In this document: one piece after another, positions 1 to 14,671 of the stretch | How the letters are laid out: every line of letters begins with the position of its first letter | How positions within the stretch are numbered: the stretch's first letter is position 1 | DNA from: Octopus sinensis | Taxonomy: Eukaryota | Direction: 5' to 3' | Assembly (NCBI RefSeq): GCF_006345805.1 | Contig: NW_021825512.1 | Span: 1 to 15,272 of the forward strand | DNA: 15,272 nucleotides | Position numbers and translations under genes: made by a program | Notes under the pieces: model-generated | Database searches by the model: none | What the model was told of the DNA's origin: nothing | Seen by the model: the letters and a program-made list of their open reading frames with translations, nothing else

Positions 1-260
1 ATTTCTTTCTTCAGCTCAAATTCCTTGAATCGGATTTGGGACACTGGAAGTCGGGAGCATACCCTTTCGGCTTCTAATCACCTCTAGAATTCTGCTCGAC
101 TAAAAGTGCTATCAAATTCGAATATGCAAGCGAAGAATTTCTGCTCTCCCCTTTCCACGTTCTCAAATAACCTTTGCACTTGATTTTTTAATGTTTTTTT
201 CCCCCATACTTTTGGTGAGTAGTTTAGGCAAACACTATCTGAGAGAGATCTTCTTTAAGT

Positions 261-303
261 ATTAGAAATAGCTGAAGAAATTTCTTTAGCTGCTATTTCT
301 AAT
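261..303. repeat. Near-perfect 43-bp hairpin (second copy at 806-848)
   Basis: ATTAGAAATAGCTGAAGAAA / TTTCTTTAGC-TGC-TATTTCTAAT: 20-bp arms with one G-T pair, a 3-nt bulge and no loop. Confidence 0.85.
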
Positions 304-662
304 GAGTTCAGTTGTGGCAAAGTAATTTATTTTACTAAGCCCTTATATATAATGTAATATTTTGAATTCGCCTATAATGGTCCCTTTACATACTGAATAC
401 TGGTGAAATTGATTAATAATTAATTAATTTTACCCTCAATGTTGAAATTATAATTCATCATCTCTCTCTCGCTAAATCTACGTTAATACATGGTGTTTGT
501 CAATTTTAACCCACGCTGGTGGAAAGGGGAGAGAGCAGAAATTCTTCGCTTGCATATTCGAATTTGATATCACTTTTAGTCCGAGCAGAATCTAGAGGTG
601 ATTAGAAGCCGAAAGGGTATGCTCCCGACTTCCAGTGTTCCCAAATCCGATTCAAGGAATTC

Positions 663-714
663 TGAGCTGAAGAAAGAAATGTCGAATTGACTAATCTAGA
701 AACGTACGTTCTCA
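663..714 (+). ncRNA. Type I hammerhead ribozyme motif, intact core
   Basis: TGAG | CTGAAGA | A-AGA-AAT-GTC-GAATT-GAC-TAA-TCT-A | GAAAC | GTAC | GTT | CTCA. Stem I TGAG/CTCA; stem II AGA/TCT plus GTC/GAC; palindromic stem III AACGTACGTT; GUU triplet. Confidence 0.7.

Positions 715-6195: not shown

Positions 6196-6227
<32 letters not shown>
6179..6227. repeat. (CT)n-(TA)n microsatellite, insertion site of the Tc1/mariner element
   Basis: Direct reading of sequence. Confidence 0.95.
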
Positions 6228-6230
<3 letters not shown>

Positions 6231-6306
6231 GGTCAGGCAAAATGATCTGAGACATTTGTAGGTTAAATAAAAGGCATTGTTTTTCGTTTCTTTTTCAGTT
6301 GCTGCC

Positions 6307-6531
6307 ATGAATTGGACTGGTGAGCATCGCGCTTTCATTGTGGAAACGTTTATCAAAACAAACGATTCTGTAACTGCAACACAAAGAGCGTTCCATTTGC
6401 ACTTCAATCTTGGTAGATATGATCCTGTACCAGCTCGAAACACGATCTTGTTATGGGTTACCAACTTCAGAGCTACTGGATCTGCATTGAAACGAAAATC
6501 AACCGGCCGACCTCGCACCGCCAGAACTTAA
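6307..6531 (+). pseudogene. Truncated transposase N-terminal helix-turn-helix (DUF4817-like), 74 aa, open with its own stop
   Basis: MNWTGEHRAFIVETFIKTNDSVTATQRAF...VPARNTILLWVTNFRATGSALKRKSTGRPRTART*. GRPR motif present; the stop TAA is created at the deletion junction. Confidence 0.85.
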
Positions 6532-6667
6532 AGATGCAATTCGTCAAGAAATTACTGCCATTCCACATGAAATGACCCGCCGAGTTATTGACAACTTTCG
6601 TGAACGCCTTCGACAGTGTGTGGACAATAATGGATCCCATTTGACTGATTTAATTTTTAAAACATAA
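6524..6667 (+). pseudogene. Transposase C-terminal remnant (different frame)
   Basis: ELKDAIRQEITAIPHEMTRRVIDNFRERLRQCVDNNGSHLTDLIFKT*, a typical Tc1/mariner C-terminal helix region. Confidence 0.85.
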
Positions 6668-6808
6668 TGAAACAAAATGGCATTATATGTACTTTTCAAA
6701 AATAAAAACACTTTTTTGTTTCTTTACTTCATTTGCCTTTTATTTAACCTACAAATGTGTCAGATCATTTTGCCTGACCCTATATATCCCTGTTTGTCGA
6801 CTTTTGCG

Positions 6809-7365
6809 ATGGCTGAATCGAAGGAATAGCATGTTGCCGTGAAATTCTGTTTTCAGCCGTGCTTCCGTGAAAAGGCGGCCGAAATAGTTGCCATGCCTCA
6901 AACAGCTTACAGGGACGCTGCCATCAGCAAGACACAAGTTTACGAGTGGTTTTCACTCTTTATGAATGGTCAGTTGCTGCTTGAAGACCGGCCTCGTTCA
7001 GGGCGACCATCCACCACCTGACGAACTTGATATGATTGATGTGTTCTTGGAGCTCCAGTCAACGAATTTTGAGCGAGGAATAGCGAATGAAAAGTGTTGT
7101 AGTAAAAATTGTGCCCCGCTCGCTCACGGAAGATCAAAAGTAGTCACGAATGGAAGCGTTTCATGAACTGAAAGAACAGTTGGAAGTTGATCCGGAACTT
7201 TTTTTTATTTCCGAAGCTCATCACTGGTGATGAAAGCTGGTGCTACGGAATTTGCAGATGTGGAAGAGATGAAGGGAAAAAACGGCGGAGGTGTTAAAAG
7301 GCATCACTTCGCAAGAGTTCCAGGACTGCTTCGAACAATGGAAAACGCGATTGGACGGATGCATT
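6809..7365 (+). pseudogene. Decayed mariner (DD34D-type) transposase with stops, frameshifts and internal deletions
   Basis: MAESKE*HVAVKFCF...AAISKTQVYEWFS...EDRPRSGRPST; KIVPRSLTEDQK; KLITGDESWCYG; then directly FADVEEMK...LKGITSQEFQDCFEQWKTRLDGCI. No TIRs found. Confidence 0.9.
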
Positions 7366-9572: not shown

Positions 9573-10660
9573 GGTTAATATCTAGATCCGCACCCGGTGG
9601 AAAAAATGGAAACGCAAATGTGTAACAGTTGTAAGGCATCGTATATTGACGGAATAAGACGTAAAAAAGGGCGTGACGAACTGGGGTGGGGTGGGGGGTC
9701 GGAAAATTCCCAGGATCAACCGTACAGGATCCACGCCCAGGTGGCAAAAATGGAAAAAATATGTGTAAGAGGTGTAAGGCATCGTATTTGAAGGAATATG
9801 ACGAAAAAAAAGCGCGCTGACAAACGGGGTGGGGGGTGGGGGGGCTCGGAAAATTGCCCCCGATTTAAAGAAAAATTTACCATCAATTTTCACCATTTAA
9901 AACGCATTGTTGGCATAAGGGAAGTAACTCTCTAAAAATCTCTATATATAAACGGCAGTTTTTCTGTGTGTCTGTCAGGTTTTACCCTCACCCTGACCAC
10001 GGCTTTCAACCGATTCTGATGAAACCTTGACACCAACATAGCCCAATGTCATAATTCAAAACTAACGCAGAGCGAAACTTTTGAAAAGTTCCCCCAGTTC
10101 TGAAAAAAATCGATAAATTCGACATGGGGTCGAGAATTTCAATTTTTTTGCTATTTCACATATTTTTCAATATTTTTGCTAAAAATGCTTTATAGTTATT
10201 TCCCTTACAAACCCGAGCAACGCCGGGCGATACTGCTAGTCTATATATATTTTTTTTTCCGAGCCCCCTCCCCCCCCGTTTGTCAGCGCGCTTTTTTTTC
10301 GTCATATTCCTTCAATATATGATGCCTTACACCTCTTAACCACACATTTTTTTCCATTTTTGCCACCTGGGCGTGGATCCTCTACGGTTGATCCTGGGAA
10401 TTTTCCGACCCCCCCCCCCCCCCGTTCGTCAGCGCCCTTTTTTTACGTCTTATTCCGTCAATATACGATGCCTTACAACTGTTCACATTTTAGATTCAGG
10501 TTGATCCTGGGAATTTTTCGACACCCCCACTCCCCCCTCCCCCACCCCCGTTCGTCAGCGCCCTTTTTTTCCGTCTTATTACGTCAATATACGATGCCTT
10601 ACAACTGTTACACATTTGCGTTTCCATGTTTTCCACCGGGTGCGGATCTAGATATTAACC
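9573..10660. mobile_element. Non-autonomous foldback-type DNA transposon with long modular TIRs and 8-bp TSD (superfamily uncertain: Merlin- or MULE-like)
   Basis: The terminal 32 bp are a perfect inverted repeat (GGTTAATATCTAGATCCGCACCCGGTGGAAAA); arms 9573-9853 and 10255-10660; TSD TTTAATTG at 9565-9572 and 10661-10668. Confidence 0.85.
9939..10239 (+). mobile_element. Non-autonomous Helitron (301 bp)
   Basis: 5' TC start after host A9938; subterminal hairpin CCCGAGCAACGCCGGG (10212-10227); 3' CTAG followed by host T10240; no TSD. Confidence 0.8.
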
Positions 10661-11178: not shown

Positions 11179-11308
11179 TACCTCAACTTTAGAATAAAAG
11201 AAAAAATATATATACACACACAATACTACACTCAATAGAATCCATTACAATCAGCCCCTTCATAGCTATATTTACATTCATATTCTCCTCCTTTCTCTCT
11301 CTGTTTTT

Positions 11309-11310
<2 letters not shown>

Positions 11311-11341
<31 letters not shown>

Positions 11342-11542
11342 ATCATCATCGTTATCATCATCATCGGCATCATCATCATCGCCACCATCATCACCCCATC
11401 TTCTCCTTCTCCTCCTTCTTCTTCATCATCATCGTTATCATCATCATCGTCGTCATAATCATCACCACCATCACCATCATCGTCATCTTCTCCTTCTCCT
11501 TCTCCTTCTCCTTCTTCTTCTTCTTCTTCTTCTTCTTCTTCT
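11311..11542. repeat. Mosaic (CTT)/(CAT)/(CAC)/(CTCCTT) repeat with an 83-bp higher-order duplication
   Basis: CATCATCATCGTTATCATCATCATCG occurs at 11341-11366 and 11424-11449. Confidence 0.9.
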
Positions 11543-11890
11543 CCACCCCCTACCCCTTAAGTTTGTCACTAATGTTTTTTAGTATAACACCTACGCTAAT
11601 TCTATAAGAAGCCTGTCAATATAAATATTCTCCTGAATTGAACTGAGACTGCCAGCCGCCACTGACCATTCAAAATACGACCATCAGGGCACCTCCCAGA
11701 TTCTCCCACCCCCCTTTCCTCACCAGCCTTCTTTCTACTACCCTACCAAGAGCTCACACCTACCTCGAACACACAAGTGCAAACAAGGGAGTCAGAGAAA
11801 GGCAGAATGCCACTTAAATCTGAACACTACTATAGAAATTTCTTTTAAAAAAACTTTTCTTCTAATTTTTCTAAATTAATTATTTAATCG

Positions 11891-11934
11891 TTACAGTTGA
11901 AAAGGTCTCAAAATGACCGAAACCGGTACTGAAA
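11891..11934 (+). ncRNA. Degenerate minimal type I hammerhead motif
   Basis: TTACAG | TTGAAAA | GGTC-TCAAAAT-GACC | GAAAC | CG | GTA | CTGAAA. Core substitutions C3U and G8A; palindrome ACCGGT. Confidence 0.6.
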
Positions 11935-12154
11935 TGTTCACTATAAAATTATTTTAGCATTTCTATTTTTTACTTGTTTTTTCATATATATATATATATA
12001 TAATTTATATATAGAGGGCATAATTATACATACATGCCAGGAGGCATTATATATACCTGCCAAACGCTAAGAGGGACAATCAGTCATTTCTACCAAAAAT
12101 ATTACTAATCCATCCCACCGAATGGCTTTTTCAAGTAAGACATTAAAAATATAT

Positions 12155-12202
12155 AGGCCTGTATCACAGTGATTTCATACTTACGTAATCATCAGCAGGC
12201 CT
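12155..12202 (-). ncRNA. Type I hammerhead ribozyme, unit 1
   Basis: AGGCCTG | CTGATGA | T-TAC-GTAA-GTA-T | GAAA | T-CAC-T-GTG | ATA | CAGGCCT. 7-bp stem I, intact core, GUAA tetraloop, AUA triplet; predicted cut between 12162 and 12161. Confidence 0.85.
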
Positions 12203-12654
12203 GAATGTATTATAAATAAACAACGACCCTGCTCGCTTAAGCCGAACAGCTAACTGATCAACATCAACGAAGCACATGGGTGAGTTTATATATATTACAT
12301 CCGGGTGAATGGCAACTTTTACAAAAATGGCAAACTTTTACAAAATTGCATTTCGGGAGAGGAAAAGTTTTTTCGGAATAAAAATTTTTGCAATTAAGGA
12401 CACCTACTTAATAAGGAAAACTTAACAAGAAATTGTCAGGTAGATACGTAAAAACCTCATAAGAGAAAAAATTTCGAAAATATTATTTCTTATTGAACAT
12501 ATTAATTTATATATAGAGGGCATAATTATACATACATGCCAGGAGGCATTATATATACCTGCCAAACGCTAAGAGGGACAATCAGTCATTTCTACCAAAA
12601 TATTACTAATCCCACCGAATGCAATTTTTCAAAGTAAGACATTTAAAAATATAT

Positions 12655-12702
12655 AGGCCTGTATCACAGTGATTTCATACTTACGTAATCATCAGCAGGC
12701 CT
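12655..12702 (-). ncRNA. Type I hammerhead ribozyme, unit 2
   Basis: Identical to the unit 1 motif, offset +500. Confidence 0.85.
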
Positions 12703-13152
12703 GAATGTATTATAAATAAACAACGACCCTGCCTCGCTTAAGCCGAACAGCTAACTGATCAACATCAACGAAGCACATGGGTGAGTTTATATATATTACA
12801 TCCGGGTGAATGGCAAACTTTTACAAAAATGGCAAACTTTTACAAAATTGCATTTCGGGAGAGGAAAAGTTTTTTCGGAATAAAAATTTTGCAATTAAGG
12901 ACAACTACTTAATAAGGAAAACTTAACAAGAAATTGTCAGGTAGATAGCGTAAAAACCTCATAAGAGAAAATTTCGAAAATAATTATTTCTTATGAACAT
13001 ATTATTTATATATAGAGGGCATAATTATACATACATGCCAGGAGGCATTATATATACCTGCCAACCTAAGAGGGACAATCAGTCATTTCTACCAAAAATA
13101 TTACTAATCCCACCGAATGCAATTTTTCAAAGTAAGACATTTAAAAATATAT

Positions 13153-13198
13153 AGGCCTGTATCACAGTGATTTCATACTACGTAATCATCAGCAGGCT
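13153..13198 (-). ncRNA. Type I hammerhead ribozyme, unit 3 (two 1-nt deletions)
   Basis: Core intact; one base missing in loop II and one in stem I (possibly sequencing error). Confidence 0.75.
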
Positions 13199-13649
13199 GA
13201 ATGTATTATACATAAACAACGACCCTGCCTCGCTTAAGCCGAATAGCTAACTGATCAACATCAACGAAGCACATGGGTGAGTTTATATTATTACATCCGG
13301 TGAATGGCAAACTTTTACAAAAATGGCAAACTTTTACAAAATTGCATTTCGGGAGAGTAAAGTTTTTTCGAATAAAAATTTTGCAATTAAGGACAACTAC
13401 TTAATAAGGAAAACTTAACAAGAAATTGTCAGGTTAGATAGCGTAAAAACCTCATAAGAGAAAAAATTTCGAAAATAATTATTTCTTATTGAACATATTA
13501 ATTTATATATAGAGGGCATAATTATACATACATGCCAGGAGGCATTATATATACCTGCCAAACGCTAAGAGGGACAATCATTCATTTCTACAAAAATATT
13601 ACTAATCCCACCGATGCAATTTTTCAAAGTAAGACATTTAAAAATATAT

Positions 13650-13697
13650 AGGCCTGTATCACAGTGATTTCATACTTACGTAATCATCAGCAGGCCT
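13650..13697 (-). ncRNA. Type I hammerhead ribozyme, unit 4
   Basis: Identical to the unit 1 motif. Confidence 0.85.
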
Positions 13698-14022
13698 GAA
13701 TGTATTATAAATAACAACGACCCTGCCTCGCTTAAGCCGAACAGCTAACTGATCACATCAACGAAGCACATGGGTGAGTTTATATATATTACCATCCGGG
13801 TGAATGGCAAACTTTACAAAAATGGCAAACTTTTACAAAATTGCATTTCGGGAGAGAAAAGTTTTTTCGGAATAAAAATTTTGCAATTAAGGACAACTAC
13901 TTATAAGGAAAACTTAACAGAAATTTGTCAGGTAGATAGCTCGAAAAACCTCATAAGAGAAAAAATTTCGAAAATAATTATTTCTTATTGAACATATTAA
14001 TTATATATAGAGGGCATAATTA

Positions 14023-14030
<8 letters not shown>

Positions 14031-14095
<65 letters not shown>

Positions 14096-14132
14096 ATATA
14101 TTATGATATATTTATATTATATATATATATAT
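14031..14132. repeat. (TA)n microsatellite
   Basis: Direct reading of sequence. Confidence 0.95.
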
Positions 14133-14315: not shown

Positions 14316-14401
14316 CTGGGTCGACAGTGATGTATACGTGTATATAAAAGCATGTACGCTTAAGTCTTTATATCTACATAAATATATTTTTATTTTCTTT
14401 T

Positions 14402-14622
14402 ATTCTTTTACTTGTTTCAGTCATTTGACTGCAGTTATGGTAGAGTGCCGCCTTAAAGGGTTTTAGTCGAAGAAATCGACCCCAGATTTATTCTTTGTAA
14501 GGTCAGAACTCATTTTATCGGTTTCTTTTGCCGAACCGCTGAGTTACAGGGACATAAACACACCAGCATCAGTTGTCAAGCGATGGTGGTGGTTGGGGGA
14601 CAAACACAGACATATACACACT
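14402..14622 (-). mobile_element. 3' half of an abundant octopus-type SINE
   Basis: Shares its terminus with 6077-6095 and an internal stretch with 14283-14315. Family and orientation recalled from memory of cephalopod repeats, not database-checked. Confidence 0.7.
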
Positions 14623-14671
14623 GATATATATAGTATATATATTATATATATATTAATATATAATATATAAT

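What the first reader, a model, noticed from the sequence alone, without database searches (positions are those of the whole stretch)
12001..14032. ~500-bp tandem array with one intact-core hammerhead per unit: candidate retrozyme / circular-RNA generator
Seen: four near-identical units, each with minus-strand AGGCCUG-CUGAUGA-U-UAC-GUAA-GUA-U-GAAA-UCAC-U-GUG-AUA-CAGGCCU; no credible ORF; (TA)n on both sides; ~35-bp terminal redundancy. Predicted cuts 3' of positions 13657, 13160, 12662 and 12162 release 497-, 498- and 500-nt monomers. The array ends lie ~160 nt from the cut site, i.e. circularly permuted relative to the monomer. Established: HHR-bearing tandem repeats occur in newt satellite 2, schistosome Sm-alpha and cave-cricket pDo500, and type I metazoan retrozymes yield circular RNAs. 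Inference: a cephalopod retrozyme-like family copied from a circular RNA by PLE RT and primed at (TA)n. Caveats: U-U at the base of stem II and an AUA triplet are suboptimal; I cannot confirm this family is undescribed.
Basis: partly seen in the sequence, partly recalled or inferred. Interest (0 to 1): 0.93.

Follow-up and report, generated by a model that had tools for sequence, protein, structure and literature searches.

The report
Octopus hammerhead-ribozyme tandem repeat (retrozyme)
A four-unit, ~500-bp tandem repeat in an octopus genome carries a complete self-cleaving hammerhead ribozyme motif in every unit, and fits the known animal "retrozyme" class (non-coding mobile repeats that give small circular RNAs), so it is a new member of a known kind.

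Summary
Window 11996-14032 is a 4.1-copy tandem array with a period of about 499 bp. Each unit carries, on the minus strand, a type I hammerhead with every catalytic core base present. The predicted cuts give monomers of 497, 498 and 500 nt.

The motif is not a chance match. A strict descriptor finds only these four sites in the window, against 1 hit in 200 shuffles. A model built from four experimentally validated retrozyme hammerheads ranks them at the top of the window. The unit is non-coding and 33% GC. As a circle it folds far better than shuffled sequence (z about -7.7).

The host is an Octopus, O. sinensis or a close relative. I found two more hammerheads of the same variant at unrelated O. 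sinensis loci. They share the U.U at the base of helix II, a 3-bp helix II and A17, with compensatory changes in the helices. Both are also embedded in microsatellites.

This meets the published structural definition of a metazoan non-LTR retrozyme. Four things were not shown: that the 500-bp unit is dispersed, that it is transcribed, cleaved or circularised, and that a Penelope-like reverse transcriptase copied it. Rfam gathering thresholds miss these ribozymes.

Verdict: new member of a known kind, moderate interest.

The parts
11996..14032 (-). Tandem array, 4.1 units of about 499-503 bp. The ribozyme-sense RNA is the minus strand.
   Evidence: TRF. Unit alignment and consensus of 503 nt.
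13657..14032 (-). 5' partial unit (376 nt, consensus positions 126 to the end), ending at the first cleavage site.
13160..13656 (-). Monomer 1, cleavage site to cleavage site, 497 nt.
12662..13159 (-). Monomer 2, 498 nt. MFE -138 kcal/mol, z = -7.1 against shuffles.
12162..12661 (-). Monomer 3, 500 nt.
11996..12161 (-). 3' partial unit (166 nt, consensus positions 1 to about 163).
13650..13697 (-). Type I hammerhead 1. Helix I is 7 bp, the core is CUGAUGA/GAAA, helix II is U.U plus 3 bp with a GUAA loop, helix III is 4 bp. Cut after A at 13657.
13153..13198 (-). Type I hammerhead 2, with two 1-nt deletions (helix I reduced to 5 bp, loop 2 GUA). Cut after 13160.
12655..12702 (-). Type I hammerhead 3, identical to hammerhead 1. 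Cut after 12662.
12155..12202 (-). Type I hammerhead 4, identical to hammerhead 1. Cut after 12162.
11984..12002 (.). (TA)n at the 3' junction in ribozyme sense. It is shared with the tail of the neighbouring dispersed repeat and is probably target DNA.
14031..14132 (.). (AT)n at the 5' junction in ribozyme sense, about 100 bp.
12308..12345 (.). 19-nt internal duplication (AATGGCAAACTTTTACAAA, 2.1 copies) present in every unit, also at 12809-12847, 13303-13341 and 13803-13840. It therefore predates the array.

Best explanation
This is a metazoan-type (non-LTR) retrozyme array in an Octopus genome: 4.1 head-to-tail copies of a non-coding, AT-rich unit of about 500 bp, each carrying a type I hammerhead ribozyme on the minus strand.

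Proposed mechanism:
- A minus-strand multimeric transcript cuts itself after A17 of each ribozyme (AUA|C). [quoted passage not shown]
- Helix II is weak (U.U plus 3 bp) and helix III is a quasi-palindrome (AUCAC-U-GUGAU). Cleavage is therefore probably slow for a lone motif and better when two ribozymes pair through an extended intermolecular helix III, a 'double hammerhead'.
- A host RtcB-type tRNA ligase closes the monomers into highly base-paired circular RNAs.
- The circle, or the concatemer, is copied by the reverse transcriptase of an autonomous retroelement, most likely a Penelope-like element. Priming is by TA microhomology at a nicked (TA)n microsatellite. This gives a multi-unit cDNA whose ends are circularly permuted relative to the cleavage site.

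Shown here: the array, the complete ribozyme motif in every unit, the lack of coding capacity, the low GC content, the strong predicted self-pairing, the octopus host, both ends lying in the unit's most TA-rich 40 nt and abutting (TA)n, and recurrence of the same ribozyme variant at other octopus loci.

Inferred from the published behaviour of the class: transcription, cleavage, circularisation, reverse transcription and the identity of the reverse transcriptase.
For: Array and ribozyme motif:
- Array. Cut sites and monomer sizes.
- All core positions are present (C3 U4 G5 A6 U7 G8 A9, G12 A13 A14, A15.1-U16.1, A17), with three helices and helix I open.
- The strict descriptor gives 4 hits in the window against 1 in 200 shuffles.
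- Rfam HH9 aligns the core and all helices at 17.3 bits, E = 0.035 in a 101-nt search space.
- Covariance model R1 was built only from the coral, mussel and two axolotl retrozyme ribozymes tested in PMC7229834. It ranks the four array motifs 1, 2, 3 and 5 among all positions of the window: 14.8 bits, E about 0.017 for three, and 9.6 bits for the indel copy.

Properties of the unit:
- The monomer and the circular consensus fold with z = -7.1 and -7.7, with 63% of bases paired. The ribozyme is not sequestered by distant sequence.
- GC is 0.32-0.33.
- No ORF exceeds 56 aa in the consensus.
- Two ribozymes cofold through a 5+5-bp intermolecular helix III, at -33.7 kcal/mol against 2 x -13.0.

Host and related loci:
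- The host is an Octopus.
- Two further hammerheads lie at unrelated O. sinensis loci, L002 13029-13085 and L003 11338-11386. They share U.U at positions 10.1/11.1, a 3-bp helix II and A17, and differ by compensatory changes in helices I, II and III. That is 2 hits in 123 kb, where shuffles predict about 0.04.
- All three elements are bounded by microsatellites, while a random point lies within 5 bp of a (TA)>=6 run with P = 0.055.
- The left (TA)n belongs to a dispersed 157-bp repeat that also ends in (AT)n at L008.

Literature:
- Definition and life cycle of non-LTR retrozymes, and the U.U variant HHR_Amex2 that works better as a dimer: PMC7229834.
- Unit lengths of 51-972 bp, with most families having at most 7 units, and descent from PLE pLTRs: preprint 10.64898/2026.07.22.740005.
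- PLE bias for (TA)n targets: PMC8557442.
- Young Penelope-like families in O. vulgaris: PMC13282606.
Against: - No Rfam hammerhead model reaches its gathering score: the best is 17.3 bits against 52.
- R1's E-value is only about 0.02 and its calibration is rough.
- In isolation the hammerhead fold (-11.0 kcal/mol) is 2 kcal/mol less stable than an alternative pairing, and helix III has almost no probability in the ensemble.
- The U.U at 10.1/11.1 and the AU-rich 3-bp helix II predict weak activity.
- No second copy of the 500-bp unit was found in the window or in 123 kb of O. sinensis DNA, so mobility of this particular unit is unproven.
- There is no RT or PLE in the window.
- (TA)n also flanks other element types here, namely the DUF4817 element and a foldback element. 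The TA association is therefore not specific to PLE-type integration.
- No target-site duplication can be read.
- Differences between units are mostly 1-nt indels in homopolymers. This suggests long-read assembly noise, so the unit count and the fine sequence are uncertain.
- At 500 nt the unit is longer than the 170-400 nt reported for invertebrate retrozymes in PMC7229834.
Confidence: 0.7

Rival explanations
1. An inert local satellite. A single hammerhead-bearing insertion, or any 500-bp segment holding a relic ribozyme, was amplified at the DNA level by unequal crossing-over or replication slippage. No circular RNA or reverse transcription was involved in making the array, and it may no longer be transcribed.
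For: Only one locus with this unit was found. The region is full of slippage-prone microsatellites, with 20 (TA)>=6 runs in 15 kb. The (TA)n at the ends could have grown out of the unit's own TA-rich segment. The two other octopus hammerheads are single copies, not arrays.
Against: The ribozyme core is intact in all four units, and the units are nearly identical (0.4-1.6% substitutions), so the array is young. The unit has the strongly self-paired fold typical of retrozyme circles. The left (TA)n is shared with the neighbouring repeat's paralogue and so was probably there before. The sample of 123 kb is far too small to exclude dispersal. Where satellites of this kind have been examined (newt, axolotl), they are expressed and circularised (PMC7229834).
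Confidence: 0.17
2. A remnant of a Penelope-like element: tandem pseudo-LTRs left after loss of the RT/endonuclease ORF, rather than a separate non-autonomous element.
For: PLE pLTRs carry type I hammerheads, insert as partial tandems and favour (TA)n (PMC8557442). Retrozymes are reported to be derived from pLTRs (10.64898/2026.07.22.740005). A hammerhead-like relic lies 60-110 bp from the array on the other strand.
Against: There is no RT or GIY-YIG coding remnant anywhere in the window. The array consists of four regular units with no interspersed ORF-derived sequence. PLE ribozymes are usually minimal variants with a 1-bp helix III (PMC7229834), whereas this one has a 4-bp helix III. The relic belongs to a separate dispersed repeat whose two known copies both lack C3 and G8.
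Confidence: 0.06
3. An assembly artefact in copy number. The locus really holds fewer or more units, and the 4.1 copies with their small differences come from a noisy long-read assembly.
For: Differences between units are dominated by single-base indels in homopolymers: 12-15 gap columns against 2-8 substitutions per pair.
Against: Units also differ by true substitutions, and the two ends are anchored in different unique flanks. Even a single unit would still carry the ribozyme.
Confidence: 0.1
4. A chance match to the hammerhead consensus in AT-rich repetitive DNA.
For: Rfam scores are below threshold. The minimum-energy fold of the isolated motif is not the hammerhead fold.
Against: The strict descriptor gives 1 hit in 200 shuffled windows. 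The motifs are top-ranked by an independent model. The same unusual variant recurs at two other octopus loci with compensatory helix changes.
Confidence: 0.01

Closest known systems
Metazoan non-LTR retrozymes (Cervera & de la Pena 2020, PMC7229834), for example Mytilus galloprovincialis repeats of 350-390 bp and Acropora millepora repeats of 220-245 bp
   Same: Both are head-to-tail repeats with one type I hammerhead per unit. Both lack LTR, PBS, PPT and ORFs, have GC below 50% and give a strongly self-paired predicted circle. The ribozyme is free to fold, and both coexist with PLEs in the genus. Mytilus is also a mollusc, and its ribozyme also lacks the classic loop 1-loop 2 contacts.
   Different: The unit is longer (about 500 nt). 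There is no sequence similarity outside the catalytic core. Helix II has U.U at its base and only 3 bp. Expression and circularity are untested, and only one locus of this unit is known.
Axolotl retrozyme Rtz_353 with ribozyme HHR_Amex2 (PMC7229834)
   Same: Both ribozymes have U.U at the base of helix II followed by 3 bp, the core CUGAUGA, A at the cleavage position 17, and a (quasi-)palindromic helix III that allows a double hammerhead.
   Different: The axolotl helix III is 2 bp plus a tetraloop (ACACGUGU), whereas the octopus one is 4 bp plus a triloop. Helix II is GC-rich in the axolotl and AU-rich here. The axolotl has about 60,000 copies, and the copy number here is unknown. The similarity may be convergent.
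Classical hammerhead satellites: newt satellite 2, Schistosoma Sm-alpha, cave-cricket pDo500
   Same: All are tandem genomic repeats with a type I hammerhead that is transcribed into multimers and monomers. pDo500 has a similar unit size (from my own knowledge).
   Different: These have Rfam-detectable canonical ribozymes with conserved loops. The octopus motif scores far below the Rfam gathering thresholds.
Penelope-like element pLTR hammerheads (Cervera & de la Pena 2014; PMC8557442)
   Same: Type I topology, dimer-capable helix III, tandem arrangement and integration at (TA)n.
   Different: There is no RT/endonuclease ORF here. The helix III is longer than in the minimal PLE variants.

Membership tests
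Hammerhead ribozyme, type I | Invariant catalytic core CUGANGA ... GAAA ... UH | tested here: met
   CUGAUGA, GAAA, U16.1 and A17 are present in all four units.
Hammerhead ribozyme, type I | Three helices around the core, with helices II and III closed by loops and helix I open | tested here: met
   Helix I is 7 bp (5 bp in one copy), helix II is 3 bp plus a GUAA loop, and helix III is 4 bp plus a CUG loop.
Hammerhead ribozyme, type I | Watson-Crick pair (usually G-C) at 10.1/11.1 closing helix II | tested here: not met
   It is U.U in the window and in both other octopus motifs. The same natural variant exists in the active axolotl HHR_Amex2 (PMC7229834).
Hammerhead ribozyme, type I | Match to a curated covariance model at its gathering score (Rfam clan CL00010) | tested here: not met
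   No match at the gathering score. The best match is HH9 at 17.3 bits against 52.
Hammerhead ribozyme, type I | Recognition by a model built from experimentally active retrozyme ribozymes | tested here: inconclusive
   R1 puts the motifs at the top of the window but with modest scores: 14.8 bits, rough E of 0.017.
Hammerhead ribozyme, type I | Helices kept by compensatory changes among related copies | tested here: met
   Three independent octopus loci have different but pairing helices I, II and III with an identical core. With n = 3 this is suggestive, not statistical.
Hammerhead ribozyme, type I | Site-specific self-cleavage | not testable with these tools
   Needs in vitro transcription of one- and two-unit constructs.
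Non-LTR (metazoan) retrozyme | Head-to-tail tandem repeats of roughly 50-1000 bp | tested here: met
   4.1 units of 499-503 bp.
Non-LTR (metazoan) retrozyme | A type I hammerhead in every repeat unit (the operational definition of an 'active' element in 10.64898/2026.07.22.740005) | tested here: met
   Four of four cleavage-site-bearing units pass the strict descriptor.
Non-LTR (metazoan) retrozyme | No LTRs, PBS or PPT and no protein-coding capacity | tested here: met
   No ORF above 56 aa in the consensus. No terminal long repeats other than the units themselves.
Non-LTR (metazoan) retrozyme | Low GC content (below 50%) | tested here: met
   GC is 0.32-0.33 across the array.
Non-LTR (metazoan) retrozyme | Monomer predicted to form a stable, highly self-paired circle | tested here: met
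   Circular MFE -128.7 kcal/mol, 63% of bases paired, z = -7.7. Linear monomer z = -7.1.
Non-LTR (metazoan) retrozyme | Dispersed multi-copy family (evidence of mobility) | tested here: inconclusive
   No other copy in the window or in 123 kb of O. sinensis DNA. No whole animal genome can be searched with these tools.
Non-LTR (metazoan) retrozyme | Expressed as linear and circular monomer RNAs | not testable with these tools
   No RNA data are available.
Non-LTR (metazoan) retrozyme | Coexistence with autonomous PLEs in the host genome | not tested
   From the literature only: 31 young Penelope-like families in O. vulgaris (PMC13282606) and Naiad remnants in Octopus spp. (PMC8557442). None is in the window.
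Penelope-like element | ORF with RT and GIY-YIG endonuclease between pseudo-LTRs | tested here: not met
   Six-frame ORFs and Pfam find only DUF4817 and a weak HTH_48 match at 6271-7018.
Viroid-like or deltavirus-like RNA replicon integrated as DNA | Self-cleaving ribozymes in both polarities | tested here: not met
   No ribozyme match on the plus strand of the array at E up to 10, and no plus-strand descriptor hit.

The most novel reading that the evidence does not exclude
Octopus genomes may carry a large, so far unannotated population of variant type I hammerheads (U.U at 10.1/11.1, 3-bp helix II, A17) that Rfam thresholds miss. Two were found in 123 kb of O. sinensis DNA, which would extrapolate very roughly to tens of thousands per genome. 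On this reading, this 500-nt unit is an active retrozyme that yields abundant circular RNAs in cephalopod tissues. Its junctions have both ends in the unit's TA-rich 40 nt and lie inside a pre-existing (TA)n. They would then be direct sequence evidence that rolling-circle cDNA is primed by microhomology at microsatellites by the young Penelope-like elements of Octopus.
Probability: 0.25. Interest if true: 0.6.

Novelty: new member of a known kind. Interest (0 to 1): 0.4.

Why it matters
It would extend ribozyme-made circular RNAs (retrozymes) to cephalopods. That lineage draws attention for unusual RNA biology and repeat-rich genomes, yet a detailed 2026 O. vulgaris repeat annotation does not mention ribozymes or retrozymes (PMC13282606).

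In practice, standard Rfam-based annotation misses this ribozyme variant entirely, so counts of hammerheads in cephalopod genomes are probably underestimates.

The clean junctions in (TA)n, with a paralogous 'empty' neighbour, offer a testable handle on how such elements integrate. It does not change the concept: the class, its life cycle and its link to Penelope-like elements are already published.

Tried and rejected
- **Rfam at gathering thresholds.** Nothing was found in the window or in the O. sinensis loci.
- **Exact or gapped ribozyme pattern in the metagenome, viral and prokaryote-genome collections.** There were 0 hits, as expected, because none holds animal genomes.
- **A spurious unit ORF as a protein handle to find other copies.** The query was 13749-13988; no protein shares words with it. 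The consensus unit has no ORF long enough to be called, so protein-indexed resources cannot find the family.
- **Looking for the orthologous locus.** I fetched O. sinensis loci through the DUF4817 transposon ORF. L001, L002, L003 and L008 are paralogous transposon copies, not the orthologue.
- **ENA contigs L004-L007.** They share only the DUF4817 element with the window and hold no hammerhead. They probably come from other taxa.
- **A relaxed-descriptor hit at window 667-710 (+).** This is chance level (22 hits in 200 shuffles) and no Rfam model recognises it. Rejected.
- **The HH9-like hit at 11883-11947 (+).** Its core is UUGAAAA, and its paralogue in L008 is equally non-canonical. It is not an active ribozyme and not part of the array.
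- **MAFFT alignment of the seven ribozymes.** It was out of register, so pairing was tabulated by hand-defined segments instead.
- **A poly(A)-like tail or target-site duplication at the junctions.** There is only an A-rich flank typical of this AT-rich genome, and no duplication can be read beyond (TA)n.
Full report
**1. The observation**

Tandem Repeats Finder reports one long-period array at 11996-14032: period 499, 4.1 copies, 95% matches, 3% indels. On the minus strand every unit contains AGGCCUG-CUGAUGA-UUAC-GUAA-GUAU-GAAA-UCACUGUGA-UA|CAGGCCU.

Cutting after the A of AUA gives sites 3' of 13657, 13160, 12662 and 12162 and monomers of 497, 498 and 500 nt. There is a 376-nt partial unit upstream and a 166-nt partial unit downstream, both in ribozyme sense.

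Against the 503-nt consensus, the array begins at position 126 and ends near 163. It is therefore circularly permuted relative to the cleavage site, with about 38 nt of terminal redundancy. The second ribozyme (core at 13192) has two one-base deletions, one in helix I and one in loop 2.

Differences between units are mostly single-base indels in homopolymers: 12-15 gap columns against 2-8 substitutions per pair. That pattern is typical of long-read assembly noise.

**2. Is it more than chance?**

- All invariant hammerhead positions are present: C3 U4 G5 A6 U7 G8 A9, G12 A13 A14, A15.1-U16.1 and A17. Helices II and III are closed by loops and helix I is open, so the topology is type I.
- My strict descriptor requires helix I of at least 5 bp, helix II of at least 3 bp (a mismatch at its base is allowed) and helix III of at least 3 bp. 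It finds only these four sites on both strands of the window, against one hit summed over 200 dinucleotide-preserving shuffles.
- Rfam finds nothing at gathering thresholds. On a 101-nt slice, the HH9 model aligns the core and all three helices at 17.3 bits, against a gathering score of 52.
- As an independent test I built a covariance model from four retrozyme ribozymes shown to cleave in PMC7229834: coral Amil224, mussel Mg353, and axolotl Ax353 and Ax330, with sequences taken from that paper's supplement. Searched without filters, it ranks the array motifs 1st, 2nd, 3rd and 5th in the window: 14.8 bits with a rough E of 0.017, and 9.6 bits for the copy with deletions.

The motif is real, but it is a divergent, thermodynamically weak hammerhead. 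In isolation the catalytic fold (-11.0 kcal/mol) is 2 kcal/mol above an alternative pairing.

**3. Properties of the unit**

- *Coding capacity.* The only ORF of 70 aa or more in the array occurs in one unit only. The consensus read as a trimer has no ORF above 56 aa in any frame.
- *Composition.* GC is 0.32-0.33.
- *RNA folding.* The ribozyme-sense monomer folds at -138 kcal/mol, z = -7.1. The circular consensus folds at -128.7 kcal/mol with 63% of bases paired, z = -7.7. The antisense strand is also structured (z = -5.9). In the predicted circle, helix I and helix II form and no distant segment sequesters the ribozyme. PMC7229834 describes the same for most metazoan retrozymes.
- *Other ribozymes.* No ribozyme of any Rfam family matches the plus strand of the array at E up to 10.
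- *Dimer potential.* Two ribozymes cofold through an intermolecular helix III, because AUCACUGUGAU is a quasi-palindrome. The energy is -33.7 kcal/mol against 2 x -13.0. This is the double-hammerhead geometry known for newt and axolotl repeats.

**4. Host and context**

The window holds no RT, endonuclease or other real gene. Pfam finds only a DUF4817 helix-turn-helix domain (6271-6528) and a weak Mos1-type HTH (6830-7018), which are remnants of a DNA transposon.

The DUF4817 ORF is 95% identical to Octopus sinensis proteins. The window also shares many other dispersed repeats with O. sinensis chromosomes, seen in loci L001, L002, L003 and L008 from GCA_006345805.1. None of these loci is the orthologue of the window.

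**5. Related sequences**

The 500-bp unit has no second copy in the rest of the window or in the 123 kb of O. sinensis DNA I could fetch. No tool here searches a whole animal genome, and because the unit is non-coding, protein-indexed look-ups cannot reach it.

The ribozyme variant does recur. L002 13029-13085 and L003 11338-11386 pass the strict descriptor. R1 ranks the L003 motif first in its locus at 19.2 bits and the L002 motif fourth across L001 and L002 combined at 10.6 bits. That is two hits in 123 kb, where shuffles predict about 0.04.

Both share the unusual U.U at 10.1/11.1, a 3-bp helix II and A17 with the window ribozyme. Their helices differ by compensatory changes:

| Locus | Helix I | Helix II | Helix III |
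|---|---|---|---|
| Window | AGGCCUG/CAGGCCU | UAC/GUA | AUCA/UGAU |
| L002 | CUUAG/CUAAG | UCU/AGG | AUCA/UGAU |
| L003 | GCUUC/GAAGC | UUC/GAA | ACAG/CUGU |

These two are single, short, non-tandem segments with no similarity to the window unit outside the ribozyme, and their isolated folds are weak. Rfam gathering thresholds see none of them.

**6. The junctions**

Both ends of the array fall inside the unit's most TA-rich 40 nt (AUGUAUGUAUAAUUAUGCCCUCUAUAUAUAAAUAAUAU) and directly abut (TA)n runs at 11984-12002 and 14031-14132. A random point in the window lies within 5 bp of a (TA)>=6 run with P = 0.055, so two ends by chance have P of about 0.003.

The L003 ribozyme segment sits between (TA)88 and (TA)18. 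The L002 segment sits between (TAA)n and (TA)n.

The left flank of the array (11829-11985) is a separate dispersed repeat. Its paralogue in L008 (17996-18152, 84% identical) also ends in (AT)n and then continues into unrelated sequence. The left (TA)n therefore probably predates the array. This works as a paralogous 'empty site'.

This fits the microsatellite, and especially (TA)n, target bias described for Penelope-like elements (PMC8557442), and priming of reverse transcription by TA microhomology. There are caveats. (TA)n also bounds the DUF4817 element and a foldback element in this genome. No target-site duplication can be read. The unit's own TA-rich stretch could also seed a microsatellite.

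**7. Explanation and rivals**

The structure meets every sequence-level criterion published for metazoan non-LTR retrozymes:
- tandem units;
- a type I hammerhead in each unit;
- no LTR, PBS, PPT or ORF;
- GC below 50%;
- a self-paired monomer (PMC7229834; 10.64898/2026.07.22.740005).

The second source reports unit lengths of 51-972 bp and at most 7 units for most families, so 4 units of 500 bp is ordinary. The ribozyme closely parallels axolotl HHR_Amex2 (U.U at the base of helix II, A17, palindromic helix III). HHR_Amex2 cleaves 22% in one hour as a monomer and much better as a dimer (PMC7229834). I predict the same behaviour here.

Transcription, cleavage, ligation by an RtcB-type ligase, and reverse transcription by a PLE are inferred from the class, not shown. 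Young Penelope-like families are reported for O. vulgaris (PMC13282606).

The main rival is an inert, locally amplified satellite. It cannot be excluded until the genome is searched. A PLE pseudo-LTR remnant is unlikely without any RT trace. Chance is excluded. The copy number may be affected by the assembly.

**8. Novelty and score**

In the searchable library, no paper links retrozymes to cephalopods. The giant squid genome paper only counts 235 Rfam 'hammerhead 1' hits, and the detailed O. vulgaris repeat annotation does not mention ribozymes.

The class, its circular-RNA life cycle and its PLE connection are established, including in another mollusc. This is a new member of a known kind, with a useful side result: an octopus hammerhead variant that Rfam cut-offs miss and that sits in microsatellites. 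Interest 0.4.

Noticed in passing
window 11829-11985 (+), hammerhead-like motif at 11890-11935; L008 17996-18152: The left flank of the array is a dispersed repeat of about 157 bp, 84% identical to a copy in O. sinensis locus L008. Both copies end in (AT)n. It contains a hammerhead-like motif (helix II GGUC/GACC, GAAAC, palindromic ACCGGU) with a non-canonical core: UUGAAAA in the window and UUUAAAA in L008. Rfam HH9 scores it 19.7 bits and R1 10.1 bits. It may be a decayed PLE-type minimal hammerhead or a coincidence.
   Followed up: partly
L002 13029-13085 (+) and L003 11338-11386 (+), O. sinensis GCA_006345805.1: Two single-copy type I hammerheads with intact cores share the variant features of the window ribozyme (U.U at 10.1/11.1, 3-bp helix II, A17). 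They lie in short segments bounded by (TAA)n/(TA)n and (TA)88/(TA)18. Rfam gathering thresholds do not detect them.
   Followed up: partly
window 6199-6787: An element of about 590 bp encodes a DUF4817 helix-turn-helix ORF, has inverted termini and is flanked by (AT)n. Copies 94-99% identical occur on several O. sinensis chromosomes. The 90%-identity protein cluster also contains a protein attributed to the amphipod Trinorchestia longiramus (KAF2346732.1). That could reflect horizontal transfer or contamination.
   Followed up: partly
window 9573-10660: A large inverted repeat has arms 9573-9671/10562-10660 and 9684-9759/10348-10423, each pair 96% complementary. It contains long G or C runs and a 126-bp internal tandem duplication (10386-10617). 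It looks like a foldback element.
   Followed up: no
window 212-452 and 744-916; L002 13308-13687: Two copies of a hairpin (foldback/MITE-like) repeat are also present in O. sinensis, again bounded by (TA)n. So (TA)n flanks are common to several element types in this genome.
   Followed up: partly
window 14369-14669: A repeat of about 250-300 bp has at least ten diverged copies (71-78% identity) in the 60-kb locus L001 alone, so it is probably an abundant SINE-like family.
   Followed up: no
window 11996-14032: Differences between units are dominated by 1-nt indels in homopolymer runs. This looks like long-read assembly error rather than divergence.
   Followed up: no
window 12308-12345, 12809-12847, 13303-13341, 13803-13840: Every unit contains a 19-nt direct duplication (AATGGCAAACTTTTACAAA, 2.1 copies). 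It is older than the array and contributes to the long-range pairing in the predicted fold.
   Followed up: no
L001 46617-46735 (+): A full-length 5S rRNA match (98.7 bits) lies in an intron-sized stretch of an O. sinensis locus. It is either a 5S gene or a 5S-derived repeat.
   Followed up: no
window 11286-11560: A long imperfect trinucleotide tract (TTC/TCA/TCT, about 270 bp) with strong negative GC skew lies about 450 bp from the array.
   Followed up: no
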